A stretch of 64,000 nt of DNA from IMG/VR virus record IMGVR_UViG_3300022200_000019, positions 1 to 64,000 of that record, one strand, 5' to 3'. The notes below the pieces were generated by a model, which saw only the letters and a program-made list of their open reading frames with translations, made no database searches and was not told the origin of the DNA. A program made the translations under genes and the position numbers. Below, one piece after another: positions 1,314-45,972 of this stretch; position 1 is the stretch's first letter; each line of letters opens with the position of its first letter.

Positions 1314-1321
1314 CATAAATA
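1314..1321 (+). promoter_or_regulatory. T4-like late promoter box (CATAAATA)
   Basis: Variant of TATAAATA upstream of a structural gene; the TAAATA core recurs before many late genes in this window. Confidence 0.7.
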
Positions 1322-1393
1322 ATATTGTTCATAGTAACTTATGCAGTTTTGCCACTGCGTATGGCCTAGAACGTCACATTAAGGAGAAAACAA

Positions 1394-2029
1394 ATGGCAA
1401 GAGCATTAAAAACACAAAAAACCAACACAGTTGATTCTGGTTTTCCATGGGTTGATCTGTACAATATTGGCGTAGTTGGTGGTAACACTGCATTAACTGG
1501 TGCACAAATCAAAACTCGCGTTAAAATTGGTTCTGCTTCTGAAGCAGACGGTTACATTATTCGTCAGAAAGGTGCCAAGAAGTTTTTGGTAACTGACGCC
1601 GCTAGCGTAAGTGCTGGTAGCTTTGTTGTCGGCCAATCATATATCGTTTTGACAGCAGGCAATACTGATTTCCAGGCAATTGGCGCTGATGCATCCTATG
1701 CAGCAGGTACAATTTTTACTGCAACTGGCGCTGGTACTGGTACTGGCACAGCAGCTCGCGTGGGCACATGTGTGCTGAGCGATCTGGCAGATGGTAGCTT
1801 GACCGCAGATACCATGACTGTGTCTGTTATTGAAACAGATTCAGGTGTAATTCGTCTGGCACGTATCAGCAACAAATGGGGCGTCGGCTTCGATGGTGTA
1901 CAACGTGCATTATCATTCACTGACTTTGCTGATTCATCCGTGGGCACACAAGCTGAAACTATTAAATCAGGTACCAAAGATCTGTACGTGGAAATCGTTC
2001 AGGTTGATAACGATTATACCTGGGGTTAA
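1394..2029 (+). CDS. Hypothetical virion (possibly head-associated) protein
   Basis: Strong RBS (AAGGAGAA), late box, lies directly after gp23; contains a Gly/Thr-rich SAGSFVVGQSY...TATGAGTGTGTA segment. Confidence 0.6.
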   Translation: MARALKTQKTNTVDSGFPWVDLYNIGVVGGNTALTGAQIKTRVKIGSASEADGYIIRQKGAKKFLVTDAASVSAGSFVVGQSYIVLTAGNTDFQAIGADASYAAGTIFTATGAGTGTGTAARVGTCVLSDLADGSLTADTMTVSVIETDSGVIRLARISNKWGVGFDGVQRALSFTDFADSSVGTQAETIKSGTKDLYVEIVQVDNDYTWG

Positions 2030-41107: not shown

Positions 41108-41551
41108 ATGACAGAAGCAGACATTCTTAAAAGATATCAGGATATCATTTCCAGAGACTATATGCTAACTGAGAACCCATATAATGTTGTGGAGGGTTAT
41201 AACAACAAGCGTGAAGCACAAGCATATCTGGTTAAAGTATACAAAGAAAATGACTATGATATGCCTTATGATGAGTGGCTTGATGATATTCGTGCAGGAG
41301 GCTACTCACCTGCACTCACCAAAGCGGTTAATGCTATTGATACTATCAAAGAAGCCACAGATGAGAAGCGTTATTGGGTAACTGTTGGCATGATGATGTA
41401 TGCTGATAACGACGAAGCAATAGTTGAAAAAGCAGAAGCATTTGCGAGTGATCTTAGAGCAAAGCAAGATAATCGTGCTACTGTAATGAGTGTATATGAA
41501 AATCCGTTTGGTTCTTTGACAGATCGTAAAGTAATGGATAAAGGCGATTAA
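41108..41551 (+). CDS. Hypothetical (putative internal head) protein
   Basis: LTE|N, VVE|G and IKE|A motifs; same operon. Confidence 0.4.
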   Translation: MTEADILKRYQDIISRDYMLTENPYNVVEGYNNKREAQAYLVKVYKENDYDMPYDEWLDDIRAGGYSPALTKAVNAIDTIKEATDEKRYWVTVGMMMYADNDEAIVEKAEAFASDLRAKQDNRATVMSVYENPFGSLTDRKVMDKGD

Positions 41552-42543
41552 TGAAAAAACTCGCTGATTACATTTTGAATTCACAAAAACCACGCATTAA
41601 TGATAGCGTGATTATCAACGTCAACAATGAATATGTAATCGAAAGCAAAGTCACAGATGTATCAGATCGTATTACCATTGTAATGGATGCTGCAACAAAA
41701 GAATTATTAAAGCATGCACAAGCAAACCCGGTTAATGAAGGATCTGTTGTAGACTTTGATCGAATTGGTCGTTATAGCGCATGGGGACGTGCATTATTAC
41801 AGGTATTGAAATACTCTAATAACCCTAAGATCATGGATAAACACACAACGGATAATGACGTTGTTCTTGTTATACGTGATAATATCTTAAATCAAATACT
41901 AGAAAAAGAGACAGACGGAAAAATTACTTCTAATCAGATTGCCATGTATGCAAAAGCAATTCCAGAATTAGATTATCAGTGGGCACCTAAAAACAAACAG
42001 CACGTAATCACAATGCCTCGTGATTTAAAACTAGTATCGTTATCAAAACCAGATAAAACCAATGAAAATGAATTAACATTTGAAAATAATACATGGCATT
42101 TGAATATCTGGACCAGCAAACCAGTTAGCAAGATTGTTTCTGAAATCAAGCAACAACTAAACAATGTTTTGTTAGAGACTAACCAAAGAGCACCCAAATC
42201 AGGAAAACGTGTGGGTAACATGCCATTAAATTATTGGGAAGCGAACCCCGGATCAGTATACACTGCTGACAAGTATTATGATATGTATCGTGCCAGCATG
42301 ATTATTGGACGGTTACCTGAAGATCCAGGTGATCTGGATGTATACAGTTGGATCAACAATGCGCCAATGATGGTTACATATACTCCTGAGGAGCTTGAAA
42401 TGGCTAAAACAGCATTTAAGTTTATGGGAATTCCAATGAGGACGCACGTACCCCCAGGCAGTGACGAACCAGATGCTGTAAATAAAGTGTCACCATTTAA
42501 ACCATTTAAAGGATATAAAGGCGCTCAGCGTCGTTCTAAATAA
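41551..42543 (+). CDS. Hypothetical (putative internal head) protein
   Basis: VNE|G and LLE|T motifs; C-terminal DEPDAVNKVSPFKPFKGY segment. Confidence 0.4.
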   Translation: MKKLADYILNSQKPRINDSVIINVNNEYVIESKVTDVSDRITIVMDAATKELLKHAQANPVNEGSVVDFDRIGRYSAWGRALLQVLKYSNNPKIMDKHTTDNDVVLVIRDNILNQILEKETDGKITSNQIAMYAKAIPELDYQWAPKNKQHVITMPRDLKLVSLSKPDKTNENELTFENNTWHLNIWTSKPVSKIVSEIKQQLNNVLLETNQRAPKSGKRVGNMPLNYWEANPGSVYTADKYYDMYRASMIIGRLPEDPGDLDVYSWINNAPMMVTYTPEELEMAKTAFKFMGIPMRTHVPPGSDEPDAVNKVSPFKPFKGYKGAQRRSK

Positions 42544-42551
42544 GTATTTGC

Positions 42552-43691
42552 ATGAGCAAAACCTACTGTGCTGCTCCCTGGCACGGCCTTCACATCAATT
42601 CATTCGGAAATGTAAAAACCTGCTGCGCAGGCGATCCTAACATATTTGGTGATCTAAATACACAGAGTATTCAAGATATTCTGTTTGGTGAAAAAATGCA
42701 AGAATTACGTGCTACTCTTAGAGAAGGTCGTATGCATGAGCAATACTGCTACAATTGTATTCAAGCAGAACGATATGGTCGTAGCGAAAGATACTGGCAC
42801 AACGAGGTAAGCAAAGACTTCGATTGTTCACAAGCAGAGTTAGATTACCACCGACCCGTTCTAGTTGATGTTCGCTGGAATATTACCTGCAATCAGAGTT
42901 GTAATTACTGTGGGGATAAATGTAGTTCAAAATGGGCAGCATTAAACGGTATTCCGTTTAAATCGCAGGTGCGTCCTTATTATCAACAAGTGCATGATTA
43001 TTTAGAGCAGTATCAGGTTTGGATGCGAGAGATAGCACTGGTCGGTGGTGAACCTTTGTTGTTACCAGAAAATGAGCGACTATTAGACATTGTGCCAGAT
43101 GGTGTTACTATTACTGTTATTACTAATTTTAGTGTAGAGCTATCCGATAATAAAATATTTGAAAAACTATCAAACCGCAAGAATGTTGGCTGGAGTTTGA
43201 GTTTTGACAACATAGGCAAACGTTATGAATATGTCAGATACGGTGGCAAATTTGCACAGCTAGAACGTAATATAGAATCACTCAAGCCTTTATTTAACCA
43301 AGGCCACTGGGCCGGTATTCATGCAGTATACAATTTATATAATTGCACACATCTAAATGAATTTACTGATTGGGCAAAAAGTCACAATCTATCAATACAA
43401 TGGCAAAGCCTATATCAACCAGAATGTCTAGATCCACTAAAGCACAACAATGAAGTTAGAAAGCTAGCACACACAGAACTCGAACAACTATTAAAAAGAA
43501 CAGATTTAACCGATAGCGAGCGCAACTTCTTTGAAACAGCACTAAATAATTTTAACAGTGCTGAAGAACAAGACGAGTCAGCAAAGCTCGCACAGCACGT
43601 AAATGATATAGAGACACTATATCACTCCGATAAAGCAGGCCAATTTCATAAGTTGTGGCCTGAACTGGTTTGTGCCTTAGGACCATTATAG
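42552..43691 (+). CDS. Radical SAM protein with N-terminal auxiliary Fe-S (SPASM/twitch-like) region
   Basis: CNQSCNYC (CxxxCxxC), GGEPLL; N-terminal CAAPW...TCC...CYNC. Confidence 0.92.
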   Translation: MSKTYCAAPWHGLHINSFGNVKTCCAGDPNIFGDLNTQSIQDILFGEKMQELRATLREGRMHEQYCYNCIQAERYGRSERYWHNEVSKDFDCSQAELDYHRPVLVDVRWNITCNQSCNYCGDKCSSKWAALNGIPFKSQVRPYYQQVHDYLEQYQVWMREIALVGGEPLLLPENERLLDIVPDGVTITVITNFSVELSDNKIFEKLSNRKNVGWSLSFDNIGKRYEYVRYGGKFAQLERNIESLKPLFNQGHWAGIHAVYNLYNCTHLNEFTDWAKSHNLSIQWQSLYQPECLDPLKHNNEVRKLAHTELEQLLKRTDLTDSERNFFETALNNFNSAEEQDESAKLAQHVNDIETLYHSDKAGQFHKLWPELVCALGPL

Positions 43692-43770
43692 GCACGGCTT
43701 GTGGCAAAATCCACAGGCGTCTGGTGCTAGCTACCCAGAAGCAACTCTCGCTACCATTGCTTTTAAAGTG
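43672..43770 (+). ncRNA. Candidate structured RNA (four consecutive hairpins)
   Basis: GTGCCT/AGGCAC, GCTTGTGG/CCACAGGC, TCTGG/CCAGA and AGCAA/TTGCT stems; GCTACC occurs twice; GC-richer than flanks; followed by a terminator. Confidence 0.4.
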
Positions 43771-43773
43771 AGG

Positions 43774-43796
43774 AGCCCGTGAAAACGGGCTTTTTT
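43774..43796. terminator. Intrinsic terminator between convergent genes
   Basis: AGCCCGT-GAAA-ACGGGCT followed by TTTTT. Confidence 0.9.
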
Positions 43797-44337
43797 ATCG
43801 CTGATTAACGACAATAGGATCTTGTTCTAGATTTAAATATTGCGCCCAGGAAGGGTGGTTAATGCGAAGTTGTGTTTTACGTATTGAATTTGCCAATTGA
43901 TAGTAGTCTGGTGTAAACGGAGCACGTTTAGGTTTAATCAATTTGTCGCTTTTGTCCCAATTGCATGGTTTACAAGCAGTTACACAATTATCCCATTCTG
44001 TTTTGCCGCCCATGCTTTTGGGAACAACATGATCAATGGTTAGTTGCGCTGGTACAAATGTGTCGCCGCAATATTGACACTGGAACATGTCACGAACATA
44101 CAGATTTGTTCTACTAAATGTTTTTGTTTTGCGTTTAGTATAACCGCTCTTTAGTGCAATTACACTAGGAACACGCATGACAGTTTTTTGGCTATGAACC
44201 GCCCAATCATCGTACCACTCTAGTACATGAACTTTTTCTAAAAACAAGAGTTTAACTGCTTGCTGCCAGTGAACAGCACTAAGTGGGATATAACTTAATG
44301 GTTGGTAATCTGGACCTAAAACTAATGTGTGAGCCAT
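43795..44337 (-). CDS. HNH endonuclease
   Basis: CQYCG...LTIDHVVPKSMGGKTEWDNCVTACKPCNWDK. Confidence 0.93.
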   Translation of the reverse strand: MAHTLVLGPDYQPLSYIPLSAVHWQQAVKLLFLEKVHVLEWYDDWAVHSQKTVMRVPSVIALKSGYTKRKTKTFSRTNLYVRDMFQCQYCGDTFVPAQLTIDHVVPKSMGGKTEWDNCVTACKPCNWDKSDKLIKPKRAPFTPDYYQLANSIRKTQLRINHPSWAQYLNLEQDPIVVNQR

Positions 44338-44341
44338 CGTT

Positions 44342-44357
44342 GTATTTAATTAAATAC
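44342..44357. promoter_or_regulatory. Perfect 16-bp palindrome forming back-to-back late boxes for HNH (-) and gp17 (+)
   Basis: GTATTTAATTAAATAC carries ATTAAATA on both strands; the minus copy is 5 nt before the HNH ATG. Confidence 0.7.
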
Positions 44358-44376
44358 GTTATTAAGGTATCAGAAT

Positions 44377-45942
44377 ATGTCCAAGAGTCTTGACGGAGTA
44401 CTTACAAAACGTGCCCATATAAGGATGAATTATACTCCTGAACAAATACAGGAGTTTGCAAAATGTGCTGATCCAGTATCTGGCCCATTTTATTTCATGG
44501 ACAATTTTTTCCACATTCAGCATCCTACCAAGGGCAAGATGAACTATCATCCGTTTGAATATCAGAAACACCTGATCGACACCTATCATAATTACAGATT
44601 TAGTATTAGCCTGATGCCCAGACAAACTGGCAAAAGCACCAGCGCAGCGGGTTACTTGTTGTGGTACGGTATGTTTAAACCTGATTCGACTATTCTTATT
44701 GCTGCACACAAATACGCTGGAGCACAGGAAATTATGCAGCGTATTCGTTATGCGTATGAATTGTGTCCAGATCATATACGTGCAGGTGTAACTTCATACA
44801 ACAAGGGATCAATTGAGTTTGATAATGGATCGCGCATTGTGGCGCAAGCAACTACAGAAAATACTGGACGTGGTATGAGTATTACACTACTTTACGCAGA
44901 TGAATTTGCATTTGTGCGGCCTACTATTGCAAAAGAATTCTGGACTAGTATTTCACCAACACTTGCAACAGGCGGTAAGGCTATTATTACAAGTACGCCT
45001 AACTCGGACGAAGACCAATTTGCACTAATTTGGAAACAGGCAAATAAAACTGAGGATGAGTTTGGCAATGAAACAGAGCTGGGCATTAATGGGTTTCGTG
45101 CATACAGAGCTCACTGGAGTGAACATCCAGACAGAGACGAAAAATGGGCAGCAGAAGAACGTGGGCGCATTGGTGAAGAACGATTCCGACGCGAGCATGA
45201 ATGTGAATTCATTATCAACGATGAGACTCTTATTAATGCTACAACACTGGTAGATCTGGAAGGTACAGAACCAGTGCGCAAGACAGGACAAGTTCGCTGG
45301 TATGATGAAGTTAAGAAAAATCACATATATGTGGTTGCACTGGATCCCAGCCTGGGCACAGGAGGCGATCCTGCTGCAATACAAGTTTTTGATGCAAATA
45401 CCACTGTGCAGGTTGCAGAATGGAAACATAACAAAACACCTATTCCAACACAGATACGTATTCTCAACGATATTGTAAAAGCAATTTACGAAAAAACACA
45501 AGACGGTACGAGCATTTATTACTCAATTGAAAATAACACAATTGGCGAAGCAGCACTTATTAGTTTAGCAGAGTTTGGTGAAGACAACTTCCCAGGTATG
45601 ATGTTAAGTGAACCTAAATCAGCAGGAACAGGAAGACGTTTCCGCAAAGGATTTAATACTACTAACAAATCTAAAATTTCTGCCTGCGCTAAACTTAAAA
45701 ACTTAGTTGAAACTAAGAAAATGATAGTAAACAGCAAAAGTCTTATTTCTGAATTTAAGACGTTTGTAGCACATGGTACAAGTTATGCTGCTAAAATTGG
45801 CGAAACTGACGATTTAGTAATGGCAACTGTTCTTGCTGTGCGTATGATGCAAGTACTTCAAAACTATCATGCAGAACTTAACACACAAATTGCTGATTTT
45901 GGTGATGAAGAAATTCCCCCTATGCCATTTATAATGTTTTGA
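44377..45942 (+). CDS. gp17: Terminase large subunit
   Basis: Walker A PRQTGKST, Walker B LLYADEFAF, ITSTPN, nuclease ALDPSLGTGGD and DDLVMA; no intein seen. Confidence 0.98.
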   Translation: MSKSLDGVLTKRAHIRMNYTPEQIQEFAKCADPVSGPFYFMDNFFHIQHPTKGKMNYHPFEYQKHLIDTYHNYRFSISLMPRQTGKSTSAAGYLLWYGMFKPDSTILIAAHKYAGAQEIMQRIRYAYELCPDHIRAGVTSYNKGSIEFDNGSRIVAQATTENTGRGMSITLLYADEFAFVRPTIAKEFWTSISPTLATGGKAIITSTPNSDEDQFALIWKQANKTEDEFGNETELGINGFRAYRAHWSEHPDRDEKWAAEERGRIGEERFRREHECEFIINDETLINATTLVDLEGTEPVRKTGQVRWYDEVKKNHIYVVALDPSLGTGGDPAAIQVFDANTTVQVAEWKHNKTPIPTQIRILNDIVKAIYEKTQDGTSIYYSIENNTIGEAALISLAEFGEDNFPGMMLSEPKSAGTGRRFRKGFNTTNKSKISACAKLKNLVETKKMIVNSKSLISEFKTFVAHGTSYAAKIGETDDLVMATVLAVRMMQVLQNYHAELNTQIADFGDEEIPPMPFIMF

Positions 45943-45943
45943 A

Positions 45944-45951
45944 CATAAATA
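45944..45951 (+). promoter_or_regulatory. Late promoter box (CATAAATA)
   Basis: Immediately after the gp17 stop, before ATG 45973. Confidence 0.65.
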
Positions 45952-45972
45952 CGACATTAACGCAGAAGAATT

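What the first reader, a model, noticed from the sequence alone, without database searches (positions are those of the whole stretch)
43672..43796. Multi-hairpin ncRNA candidate between the radical SAM and HNH genes
Seen: four consecutive stems (43672-43695, 43697-43718, 43720-43739, 43740-43761), more than a terminator needs. A GCTACC hexamer occurs in both of the last two hairpins. An alternative long-range pairing CCTTA(43675)/TGAGG(43769) could close a multibranch junction. A canonical terminator follows. I could not match it to tRNA, hammerhead, twister, pistol or HDV cores by eye. Inference: a small phage ncRNA or a processing element located near the terminase.
Basis: partly seen in the sequence, partly recalled or inferred. 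Interest (0 to 1): 0.6.

Follow-up and report, generated by a model that had tools for sequence, protein, structure and literature searches.

The report
Conserved structured RNA ending a phage operon
The four hairpins and the terminator are real, and they form a 125-nt RNA module that one clade of uncultured freshwater jumbo phages keeps almost unchanged while neighbouring genes have diverged heavily; it is a credible new phage non-coding RNA whose partner and function are unknown.

Summary
Window 43672-43796 (+) carries four hairpins and a GNRA-capped intrinsic terminator. It folds better than all 200 shuffles (z -3.25); the minus strand does not (z -1.76).

It matches no Rfam family, tRNA or tmRNA, and it occurs once in the 213-kb phage record.

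Twelve distinct relatives from metagenomes keep it at 94-98% identity. Four-fold degenerate sites in the flanking genes (ORF330, radical SAM, HNH, TerL) differ by 36-66%, including the HNH codons that touch the terminator. The block is kept whether the gene upstream is radical SAM or ORF330, and whether or not a GIY-YIG gene follows.

Substitutions mostly spare the pairing:
- two compensatory pairs in hairpin 2
- U.G changed to C-G or U-A
- terminator loops GAAA, GUAA and GCAA
- a divergent copy with a completely different hairpin-4 stem but the same loop, UCGCUACC

An aquatic metatranscriptome holds one 250-nt contig (depth 22.7) exactly here and nothing else across 1.4 kb.

Best reading: the structured 3' end of a late transcript, which terminates transcription and persists as a stable small RNA with sequence-specific loops. 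A purely cis role as terminator and stabiliser is the main rival. The kind is known; the family is new; the distribution is narrow.

The parts
43672..43695 (+). Hairpin H1 (GUGCCU/AGGCAC, 12-nt loop UAGGACCAUUAU). It carries the last codons and the TAG stop of the radical SAM gene. It marks the 5' border of the conserved core in relatives that lack radical SAM.
   Evidence: It is invariant in 12 variants apart from one loop position (A, U or deleted). The sequence, though not the full stem, is kept in the divergent copy L024. There is no covariation.
43697..43718 (+). Hairpin H2 (8 bp, loop CAAAAU).
   Evidence: Two adjacent pairs change on both sides (G-C/U-A to A-U/C-G) in 4 of 12 distinct sequences. 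U.G at 43699/43716 becomes C-G (4 sequences) or U-A (1). Three sequences have a mismatch at 43700/43715.
43720..43739 (+). Hairpin H3 (5 bp, 10-nt loop UGCUAGCUAC containing GCUACC).
   Evidence: An inserted G is bulged in L088, re-paired as G.U with a register shift in L022 (8-bp stem, z -4.81), and leaves one mismatch in L061. The loop G43730 is A in five variants. H3 is absent from L024.
43740..43761 (+). Hairpin H4 (AGCAA/UUGCU, 12-nt loop CUCUCGCUACCA), followed by UUUUAAAG.
   Evidence: Invariant stem in 12 variants. L024 has the stem AACAGA/UCUGUU instead, with the loop UCGCUACC and the trailing UUUUAAA retained.
43747..43772 (+). Alternative helix CUCGCU (43747-43752) with AGUGAG (43767-43772). 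It is either a rival to H4 or forms an H-type pseudoknot with it. RNAfold prefers it over H4.
   Evidence: MFE; one C-G to U.G change; otherwise invariant. Not conserved in L024. Status open.
43774..43796 (+). Intrinsic terminator: 7-bp G+C-rich stem, GNRA tetraloop and U6. The HNH stop codon on the minus strand overlaps the end of the U-run (43795-43797).
   Evidence: The loop is GAAA, GUAA or GCAA, and the closing pair is U-A or U.G across variants.
43535..43671 (+). Accessory conserved segment inside the radical SAM 3' end, found only in relatives that carry radical SAM. It has three more inverted repeats (43537-43543/43557-43563, 43605-43611/43617-43623, 43636-43642/43656-43662) and a late-promoter-like CTAAATAA at 43542-43549.
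   Evidence: Four-fold sites in the last 52 codons differ at 0-1 of 16-17 positions, against 52-66% in the rest of the gene. The fold of 43530-43800 gives z -4.06.
42552..43691 (+). Radical SAM/SPASM gene. It is an accessory gene, present or absent between ORF330 and H1 in different relatives.
   Evidence: Pfam and PHROGs; relatives without it.
42536..43543 (+). The feature itself is only 42536-42543: a late-promoter-like CTAAATAA that overlaps the ORF330 stop codon. It lies 16 nt before the radical SAM start here. In relatives without radical SAM the same motif sits 1-2 nt before H1.
   Evidence: Motif enrichment (A/C/T)TAAATA upstream of genes; sequences. The PWM rank is only moderately high. 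Inference only.
43795..44337 (-). HNH endonuclease gene, convergent with the RNA. It accompanies the element on every element-bearing contig that extends past the terminator.

Best explanation
This is the conserved, highly structured 3'-terminal domain of a late + strand transcript. That transcript comes from ORF330, or from the radical SAM gene where it is present.

Shown: hairpins H1-H4 are followed by a GNRA-capped intrinsic terminator. Nearly every nucleotide, including loops and linkers, is under strong purifying selection. The constraint acts on the + strand RNA. The module keeps its sequence whichever genes flank it.

Inferred mechanism: RNA polymerase stops at the terminator. The stacked hairpins protect the 3' end, so a fragment of roughly 105-160 nt outlives the mRNA body, either as a processed fragment or, in some lineages, started from a late-promoter-like CTAAATAA just upstream. 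The invariant single-stranded loops, above all UCGCUACC in H4, would be the contact surface for a specific protein or RNA partner. That partner is unidentified.
For: 1. Real and non-random fold on the + strand only.

2. Conservation. The element is 94-98% identical to the window copy in relatives. Their ORF330, radical SAM, HNH and TerL genes are 71-87% identical at nucleotide level and differ at 36-66% of four-fold sites, including the 60 HNH codons next to the terminator. In relatives without radical SAM the conserved block starts exactly at H1 and ends at the terminator.

3. Substitutions. There are two compensatory pairs in H2, changes from U.G to C-G or U-A, and an indel in H3 re-paired as G.U. 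All three terminator loops are GNRA. L024 swaps the whole H4 stem but keeps the loop. The five differences in the RNA contig lie in unpaired positions or keep a wobble pair.

4. Strand. Many U.G pairs exist on the + strand that would be C.A on the minus strand. Only one pair, in two sequences, favours the minus strand.

5. Expression. A 29-Mb metatranscriptome run holds a single 250-nt contig (depth 22.7) on 43634-43848, plus 35 further nt, and nothing else in 43000-44400.

6. The loops and linkers are as invariant as the stems. A plain terminator or stabiliser does not need that.
Against: - Covariation is thin. It amounts to one probable double event in H2 plus the single divergent copy L024. 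H1, H4 (within the close set) and most of the terminator never vary, so they say nothing either way.
- The RNA evidence is one assembled contig without strand or end information. It runs about 87 nt past the terminator into the HNH 3' end.
- No own promoter is demonstrated. The CTAAATAA motifs are hints only, and L024 lacks the internal one.
- No phage mRNA target stands out. The best loop-to-start-site duplex is -13.8 kcal/mol, weaker than shuffled loops give.
- The element is confined to one narrow clade and is absent from relatives with TerL at or below 78% and radical SAM at or below 64% identity.
- L024 lacks H3 and the strong terminator.
Confidence: 0.45

Rival explanations
1. The module acts only in cis. 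It would be a tandem terminator and 3'-end stabiliser that insulates the convergent late (+) and HNH (-) transcription units, with no separate RNA species and no specific partner.
For: It sits exactly between convergent genes. H4 followed by UUUU, and the strong hairpin followed by U6, look like tandem terminators; in L024 the H4-like hairpin with UUUU is the only terminator. The A-rich 5' flank and U-rich 3' flank would suit two-way termination. The RNA contig spans both sides of the terminator, as expected if the 3' ends of both convergent transcripts accumulate. TerL has its own promoter-like motif, so a stop here costs nothing.
Against: A terminator or stabiliser needs pairing, not sequence. 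Here the loops (12, 6, 10 and 12 nt) and the linker are almost invariant while neutral sites next door are about 50% different. H1-H3 have no U-tracts. The minus strand folds no better than many shuffles.
Confidence: 0.3
2. The constraint acts on DNA rather than RNA. The block could be a protein-binding or recombination site, such as a homing-endonuclease recognition region or a packaging or replication signal next to TerL.
For: Two endonuclease genes (HNH, and GIY-YIG in some relatives) sit immediately beside it. The GCTACC copies are 20 bp apart. Radical SAM and GIY-YIG are present or absent with borders exactly at the ends of the block. Several relatives' contigs end inside the block.
Against: The compensatory and wobble-preserving changes and the GNRA loop set are expected for RNA, not for duplex DNA. 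The contig ends fall at different positions, as assembly forks do. HNH itself is as diverged as other genes, so no recent homing sweep is seen. HNH homologues elsewhere lack the block.
Confidence: 0.1
3. The block has no function of its own. Its uniformity would reflect recent recombination or gene conversion spreading one copy through the clade.
For: H2 and terminator-loop variants occur in all combinations among relatives, which suggests recombination within the region. The locus is mosaic.
Against: A sweep would have to stop exactly at H1 on the left in lineages without radical SAM, and exactly at the U-run on the right. Adjacent HNH codons differ at 37-67% of four-fold sites. The few changes that did occur avoid breaking pairs.
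Confidence: 0.08
4. The block is a cis-regulatory leader (attenuator, riboswitch or antiterminator RNA) controlling the genes downstream on the + strand, for example TerL.
For: The arrangement is hairpins followed by a terminator. There is a weak full-length Rfam hit to Trp_leader (17.1 bits, E 0.8). In relatives without radical SAM a 6-codon mini-ORF starts in H1.
Against: The Trp_leader score is far below its gathering score of 41. The next sequence on the + strand is antisense HNH, and TerL lies 580 nt away with its own TTAAATAC motif. No alternative antiterminator pairing is conserved. Distant relatives express TerL without the element.
Confidence: 0.04

Closest known systems
3' UTR-derived bacterial small RNAs (for example GlnZ, 10.1101/2022.04.01.486790; CpxQ, SroC and DapZ from my own knowledge)
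   Same: It sits at the 3' end of a protein-coding transcript and shares that transcript's intrinsic terminator. It is more conserved than the coding sequence upstream. An A/U-rich stretch precedes the terminator hairpin and U-tail. There may be an internal promoter in the 3' end of the coding sequence (43542-43549), or the RNA may be released by processing.
   Different: It is phage-encoded, and no target, chaperone or processing site is known. There are several structured loops rather than an open seed region. The same module follows different genes in different relatives.
Small RNAs mapped in jumbo phages: 201phi2-1 sRNA005 and phiKZ sRNA upstream of gp182 (PMC11512511); PA5oct ncRNA001-004 (PMC7318152)
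   Same: These are short, structured, conserved transcripts of unknown function in large phages. PA5oct is the nearest cultured relative by TerL (54.6% identity).
   Different: Those RNAs derive from 5' UTRs or lie in the terminal repeat region, and none lies beside TerL. PA5oct has no gap or RNA upstream of its TerL. There is no sequence or Rfam relation.
Intrinsic (Rho-independent) terminators, including two-way terminators between convergent genes
   Same: The last hairpin has a G+C-rich 7-bp stem, a GNRA tetraloop and a U6 tail, with an A-rich 5' flank.
   Different: Three to four further hairpins with invariant loop sequences precede it. Termination does not require them.
phi29 packaging RNA (pRNA, Rfam RF00044)
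   Same: A small structured phage RNA, here encoded near packaging genes.
   Different: There is no Rfam match and no pair of mutually complementary loops. The phage has a T4-type large terminase rather than the phi29 motor.

Membership tests
Any Rfam 15 family (4227 models, including hammerhead, twister, pistol, HDV, HEARO, pRNA, tRNA and riboswitches) | Covariance-model score at or above the family's gathering score | tested here: not met
   The gathering scan of the whole window finds only freshwater-2 at 1320-1396. A permissive scan of 43500-43950 gives Trp_leader at 17.1 bits (gathering score 41) as the best hit, and the other hits are weaker.
tRNA / tmRNA | Cloverleaf or tmRNA architecture detectable by ARAGORN | tested here: not met
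   No gene in the window. None at 90% or 80% of the default thresholds. Only implausible intron-containing calls appear at 70%.
Intrinsic terminator | Stable G+C-rich stem-loop directly followed by a U-tract on the transcribed strand | tested here: met
   Stem 43774-43780 with 43785-43791, GAAA loop, U6 at 43791-43796. It is predicted in every variant. The simple scan missed it, probably because of stem extension into the U-run.
3' UTR-derived small RNA | Lies at the 3' end of an mRNA and shares its terminator | tested here: met
   It begins in the last codons of the radical SAM gene, or 1-2 nt after the ORF330 stop, and ends at the terminator.
3' UTR-derived small RNA | Discrete, stable transcript more abundant than the parent mRNA | tested here: inconclusive
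   An RNA-library contig of 250 nt (depth 22.7) covers only 43634-43848 plus 35 nt of the 1401 nt laid. It is an assembled contig without strand or end information.
3' UTR-derived small RNA | Conserved seed that pairs with target mRNAs | tested here: inconclusive
   The loops are conserved, but no phage start site pairs better than it does with shuffled loops. The host is unknown, so host targets could not be tested.
phi29-type pRNA | Complementary left and right loops for ring formation, and a phi29-type packaging ATPase | tested here: not met
   I found no complementary loop pair by inspecting the loops. TerL is Terminase_6N/6C, the T4 type.
HEARO / IscB omega RNA | RNA upstream of, and on the same strand as, a 400-500 aa IscB (RuvC plus HNH) | tested here: not met
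   The HNH protein is 180 aa with only an HNH domain. It is convergent with the RNA, and there is no HEARO hit.
Single-subunit (T7/SP6-like) RNA polymerase promoter, suggested by TTAGG...TATAGG in H1 | Repeated near-identical ~20-bp motif before many genes, with fixed spacing | tested here: not met
   The motif is unique in 212,917 bp even with 5 mismatches allowed. Its internal spacing varies by 1 nt among relatives. The phage instead shows a T4-like TAAATA motif.
Leader attenuator / riboswitch | Controls an ORF directly downstream on the same strand through alternative terminator and antiterminator pairing | tested here: not met
There is no + strand ORF directly downstream in the window, and no conserved alternative pairing to the terminator arm.

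The most novel reading that the evidence does not exclude
The module is a dedicated phage effector RNA. It would be a stable decoy or scaffold whose invariant loops (UCGCUACC and the H1 loop UAGGACC) bind a specific host or phage protein, for example to neutralise a host defence or RNA-binding regulator, or to assist the packaging machinery encoded next door. On this reading it was acquired once by this freshwater jumbo-phage clade, together with the HNH gene.
Probability: 0.12. Interest if true: 0.7.

Novelty: new member of a known kind. Interest (0 to 1): 0.4.

Why it matters
Few phage-encoded small RNAs have a known role, and almost none come from uncultured environmental jumbo phages. This RNA candidate has clear borders, very strong purifying selection and a first sign of expression. 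It also comes with natural variants (with or without the radical SAM gene, with or without GIY-YIG, and a short form in L024) that already mark out the core. That makes it a practical target for structure probing, pull-down of its partner and a proper covariance model. It also shows that nucleotide-level constraint reaches about 137 nt into the radical SAM coding sequence, which gene annotation should take into account.

Tried and rejected
- **Rfam (gathering and permissive) and ARAGORN, including lowered thresholds.** No family, tRNA or tmRNA.
- **T7/SP6-like promoter idea for H1.** The motif is unique in the genome.
- **Second copy in the phage.** The only other covariance-model hit (1180-1304, 16 bits) is just another terminator.
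- **Origin from a host gene.** Two pattern scans of 185,579 species genomes found nothing.
- **Part of a mobile HNH cassette.** HNH homologues at about 50% identity in other phages have no such element.
- **Analogous element in more distant relatives.** Not found before TerL or after radical SAM.
- **Homing co-conversion as the cause of conservation.** HNH four-fold sites are 36-53% different, and 37-67% in the 60 codons next to the element.
- **Trans targets among phage start sites.** None pairs better than with shuffled loops.
- **PWM for the late promoter.** It carries little information beyond the core heptamer.
- **Phage collection by BLASTN.** No match.
- **Hairpin-1 pattern in IMG/VR.** One extra hit (L078) was a chance match inside a coding sequence on the opposite strand.
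- **GCUACC-loop hairpins as a genome-wide family.** Not seen.
- **Not used.** The large protein searches, structure prediction and complex prediction were not needed for this question.

Full report
**Setting.** The window is the first 64 kb of a 212,917-bp IMG/VR virus record that CheckV estimates as 61% complete. By large terminase, its nearest cultured relatives are PA5oct-like Pseudomonas jumbo phages at 54.6% identity. The record comes from freshwater metagenomes.

Around the finding the genes run as follows:
- ORF330: 41551-42543, + strand, no family match
- radical SAM/SPASM gene: 42552-43691, + strand
- HNH endonuclease gene: 43795-44337, minus strand
- T4-type large terminase (TerL): 44377-45942, + strand

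The finding therefore lies where the + strand unit and the HNH gene converge.

**The observation.** All four stems, both GCTACC copies, the CCTTA/TGAGG pair and the terminator are at the stated coordinates. H1 is not intergenic: it carries the last six radical SAM codons and the TAG stop.

The 129-nt + strand folds at -46.1 kcal/mol against -34.5 for shuffles (z -3.25, none of 200 as good). The minus strand reaches only z -1.76. RNAfold keeps H1, H2, H3 and the terminator. In place of H4 it prefers CUCGCU (43747-43752) with AGUGAG (43767-43772). That pairing crosses H4, so the two could be alternatives or could form an H-type pseudoknot.

The simple terminator scan missed the last hairpin. I attribute this to the A-rich flank extending the stem into the U-run, because the hairpin with its U6 tail is plain in the sequence.

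**What it is not.** No Rfam family reaches its threshold. The best hit is Trp_leader at 17 bits against a gathering score of 41. ARAGORN finds nothing, even at 80% thresholds.

The H1 sequence looks a little like an SP6/T7 promoter, but it is unique in the 213-kb record. The element is also single-copy. No bacterial or archaeal species genome holds either of two diagnostic patterns.

**Relatives.** Protein-guided and pattern searches of IMG/VR and JGI metagenomes, followed by a covariance model built from four copies, gave 26 occurrences. They comprise 12 distinct full-length sequences plus one divergent copy, L024. Three facts stand out.

1. *The block is far more conserved than its surroundings.* It is 94-98% identical to the window copy. 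ORF330, the radical SAM body, HNH and TerL are 71-87% identical. Four-fold degenerate sites give the neutral baseline:

   | Region | Four-fold sites that differ |
   |---|---|
   | TerL | 48-63% |
   | ORF330 | 40-52% |
   | radical SAM, first 327 codons | 52-66% |
   | HNH, whole gene | 36-53% |
   | HNH, 60 codons abutting the terminator | 37-67% |

   Because HNH is itself this diverged, co-conversion by a recently spreading endonuclease gene cannot explain the uniformity.

2. *The block is modular.* In L019, L022, L061 and L088 the radical SAM gene is absent. The element then starts 1-2 nt after the ORF330 stop, exactly at H1, with a loop one nucleotide shorter. Within this group identity jumps from 0.7-0.87 in ORF330 to 0.95-0.98 in the element.

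   In L005, L022 and similar contigs a GIY-YIG gene (Pfam 27.3 bits) is inserted directly after the U-run, ahead of HNH. Several relatives' contigs stop inside the block at different positions. That is what an assembler does at a shared segment flanked by variable content.

3. *The element is clade-specific.* Relatives with TerL at or below 78% identity have other genes before TerL. Seventy-two contigs with radical SAM at 53-64% identity put its stop against the next gene, often TerL, and the covariance model finds nothing there. HNH homologues at about 50% identity elsewhere also lack it.

**Evidence for RNA structure.** Across the 12 variants 98.6% of pair cells are standard pairs.

- *H2.* Two adjacent pairs changed on both sides in four sequences. 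Its U.G pair became C-G in four sequences and U-A in one. Three sequences carry one mismatch.
- *H3.* A G inserted in H3 is a bulge in L088. It is re-paired as G.U with a register shift in L022, whose H3 becomes an 8-bp stem.
- *Terminator.* The loop is GAAA, GUAA or GCAA, all of the GNRA type. The closing pair alternates between U-A and U.G.
- *L024.* It keeps the H1 sequence and has a different hairpin in place of H2. It has a single hairpin whose stem (AACAGA/UCUGUU) shares little with H4 while the loop UCGCUACC and the trailing UUUUAAA are kept.
- *RNA contig.* The five differences in the contig all fall in unpaired positions or keep a wobble pair.

The many U.G pairs would be C.A on the other strand, which points to a + strand RNA.

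The limits are clear. The compensatory events are few and may each have happened once. H1, H4 and most of the terminator do not vary in the close set. The tool's shuffle control is not a probability.

**Extension into the coding sequence.** In relatives that carry radical SAM the constraint starts near 43535. The last 52 codons differ at 0-1 of 16-17 four-fold sites. The stretch holds three more inverted repeats, and two of them show U-A to U.G changes. The fold of 43530-43800 gives z -4.06.

It also holds CTAAATAA at 43542-43549. The phage has a T4-like (A/C/T)TAAATA motif 11-80 nt before some 59 genes; the ATAAATA core alone is 17-fold enriched. The motif occurs before TerL and before HNH in a palindrome (44342-44357), and at the ORF330 stop (42536-43543 region: 42536-42543). 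In relatives without radical SAM that last copy sits right before H1.

So the RNA may have its own late promoter in some lineages. This remains an inference: the PWM adds little, and L024 lacks the internal motif.

**Expression.** Of 24 public runs holding part of 43000-44400, one is RNA: an aquatic metatranscriptome from 2023 with 29 million letters. Laid on the stretch, it contributes one contig of 250 nt at depth 22.7. The contig covers 43634-43848 plus 35 more letters that resemble relatives' HNH 3' ends. Nothing else in the 1.4 kb is covered.

Uniform DNA carry-over would not give that pattern. It fits accumulation of the structured 3' end, possibly of both convergent transcripts. Contigs show neither strand nor true ends, so I count this as suggestive only.

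**Mechanism.** The anatomy, the strand evidence and the invariant loops together make the best reading a structured 3'-terminal RNA domain. It would stop the late transcript and survive as a stable small RNA, presenting fixed loops to a specific partner (confidence 0.45). A search for partner sites among phage translation start regions found nothing better than shuffled loops give. The host is unknown.

The rivals, with my confidence in each:
- a purely cis terminator, stabiliser and insulator (0.30)
- a DNA-level site (0.10)
- uniformity through recombination (0.08)
- a leader or attenuator (0.04)

**Comparison and novelty.** It works most like 3' UTR-derived small RNAs and like the still-uncharacterised small RNAs mapped in jumbo phages (PMC11512511, PMC7318152). 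It belongs to no described family. PA5oct has no RNA or gap before its TerL. I class it as a new member of a known kind, with a narrow distribution and no function yet, and I score interest as moderate.

Noticed in passing
window 1320-1396 (+): A freshwater-2 RNA (Rfam RF02980; 56.6 bits against a gathering score of 49.9) lies just before the start of the gene at 1394-2029. It follows a CATAAATA late-promoter-like motif and a strong terminator at about 1277-1300. It appears to be the 5' leader of a late gene in this phage.
   Followed up: partly
whole record G000; in the window e.g. 44350-44357 (TerL), 42536-42543, 45945-45952: A T4-like late-promoter motif (A/C/T)TAAATA sits 11-80 nt before about 59 of 236 crude ORF calls. 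The ATAAATA core alone is 17-fold enriched. This suggests T4-style late transcription by a modified host polymerase.
   Followed up: partly
window 44342-44357: A perfect 16-bp palindrome, GTATTTAATTAAATAC, lies in the 39-nt gap between the divergent HNH and TerL starts. It places a TAAATAC motif in front of each gene.
   Followed up: no
window 42544-43671 versus L019, L022, L061, L088: The radical SAM/SPASM gene is present or absent among close relatives, with clean borders: just after the ORF330 stop, and at the start of H1. More distant relatives (279 hits in IMG/VR) carry it directly before TerL.
   Followed up: partly
L022:1917-2447 (+), also L005/L020, L083, L087: A 176-aa GIY-YIG endonuclease gene is inserted right after the terminator's U-run in some relatives, ahead of HNH. 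The spot between the terminator and TerL therefore collects endonuclease genes.
   Followed up: partly
window 43535-43671 (+): The last 52 codons of the radical SAM gene are nearly frozen at synonymous sites and contain three inverted repeats. This is an overlapping non-coding constraint inside a coding sequence.
   Followed up: partly
L003/L013, L006/L016, L007/L085, L010, L011/L023: Five relatives' contigs end inside the conserved block, each at a different position. The likely cause is assembly forks where a shared segment meets variable flanks, rather than genome ends.
   Followed up: no
window 43616-43643 (-): This is the only sigma-70-like promoter match in 43300-44500 (TTGGCC, 16-nt spacer, TATAGT with an upstream TG). 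It lies on the minus strand inside the conserved radical SAM tail, pointing antisense to the radical SAM gene. Fewer matches were found than in shuffles, so it may be chance.
   Followed up: no
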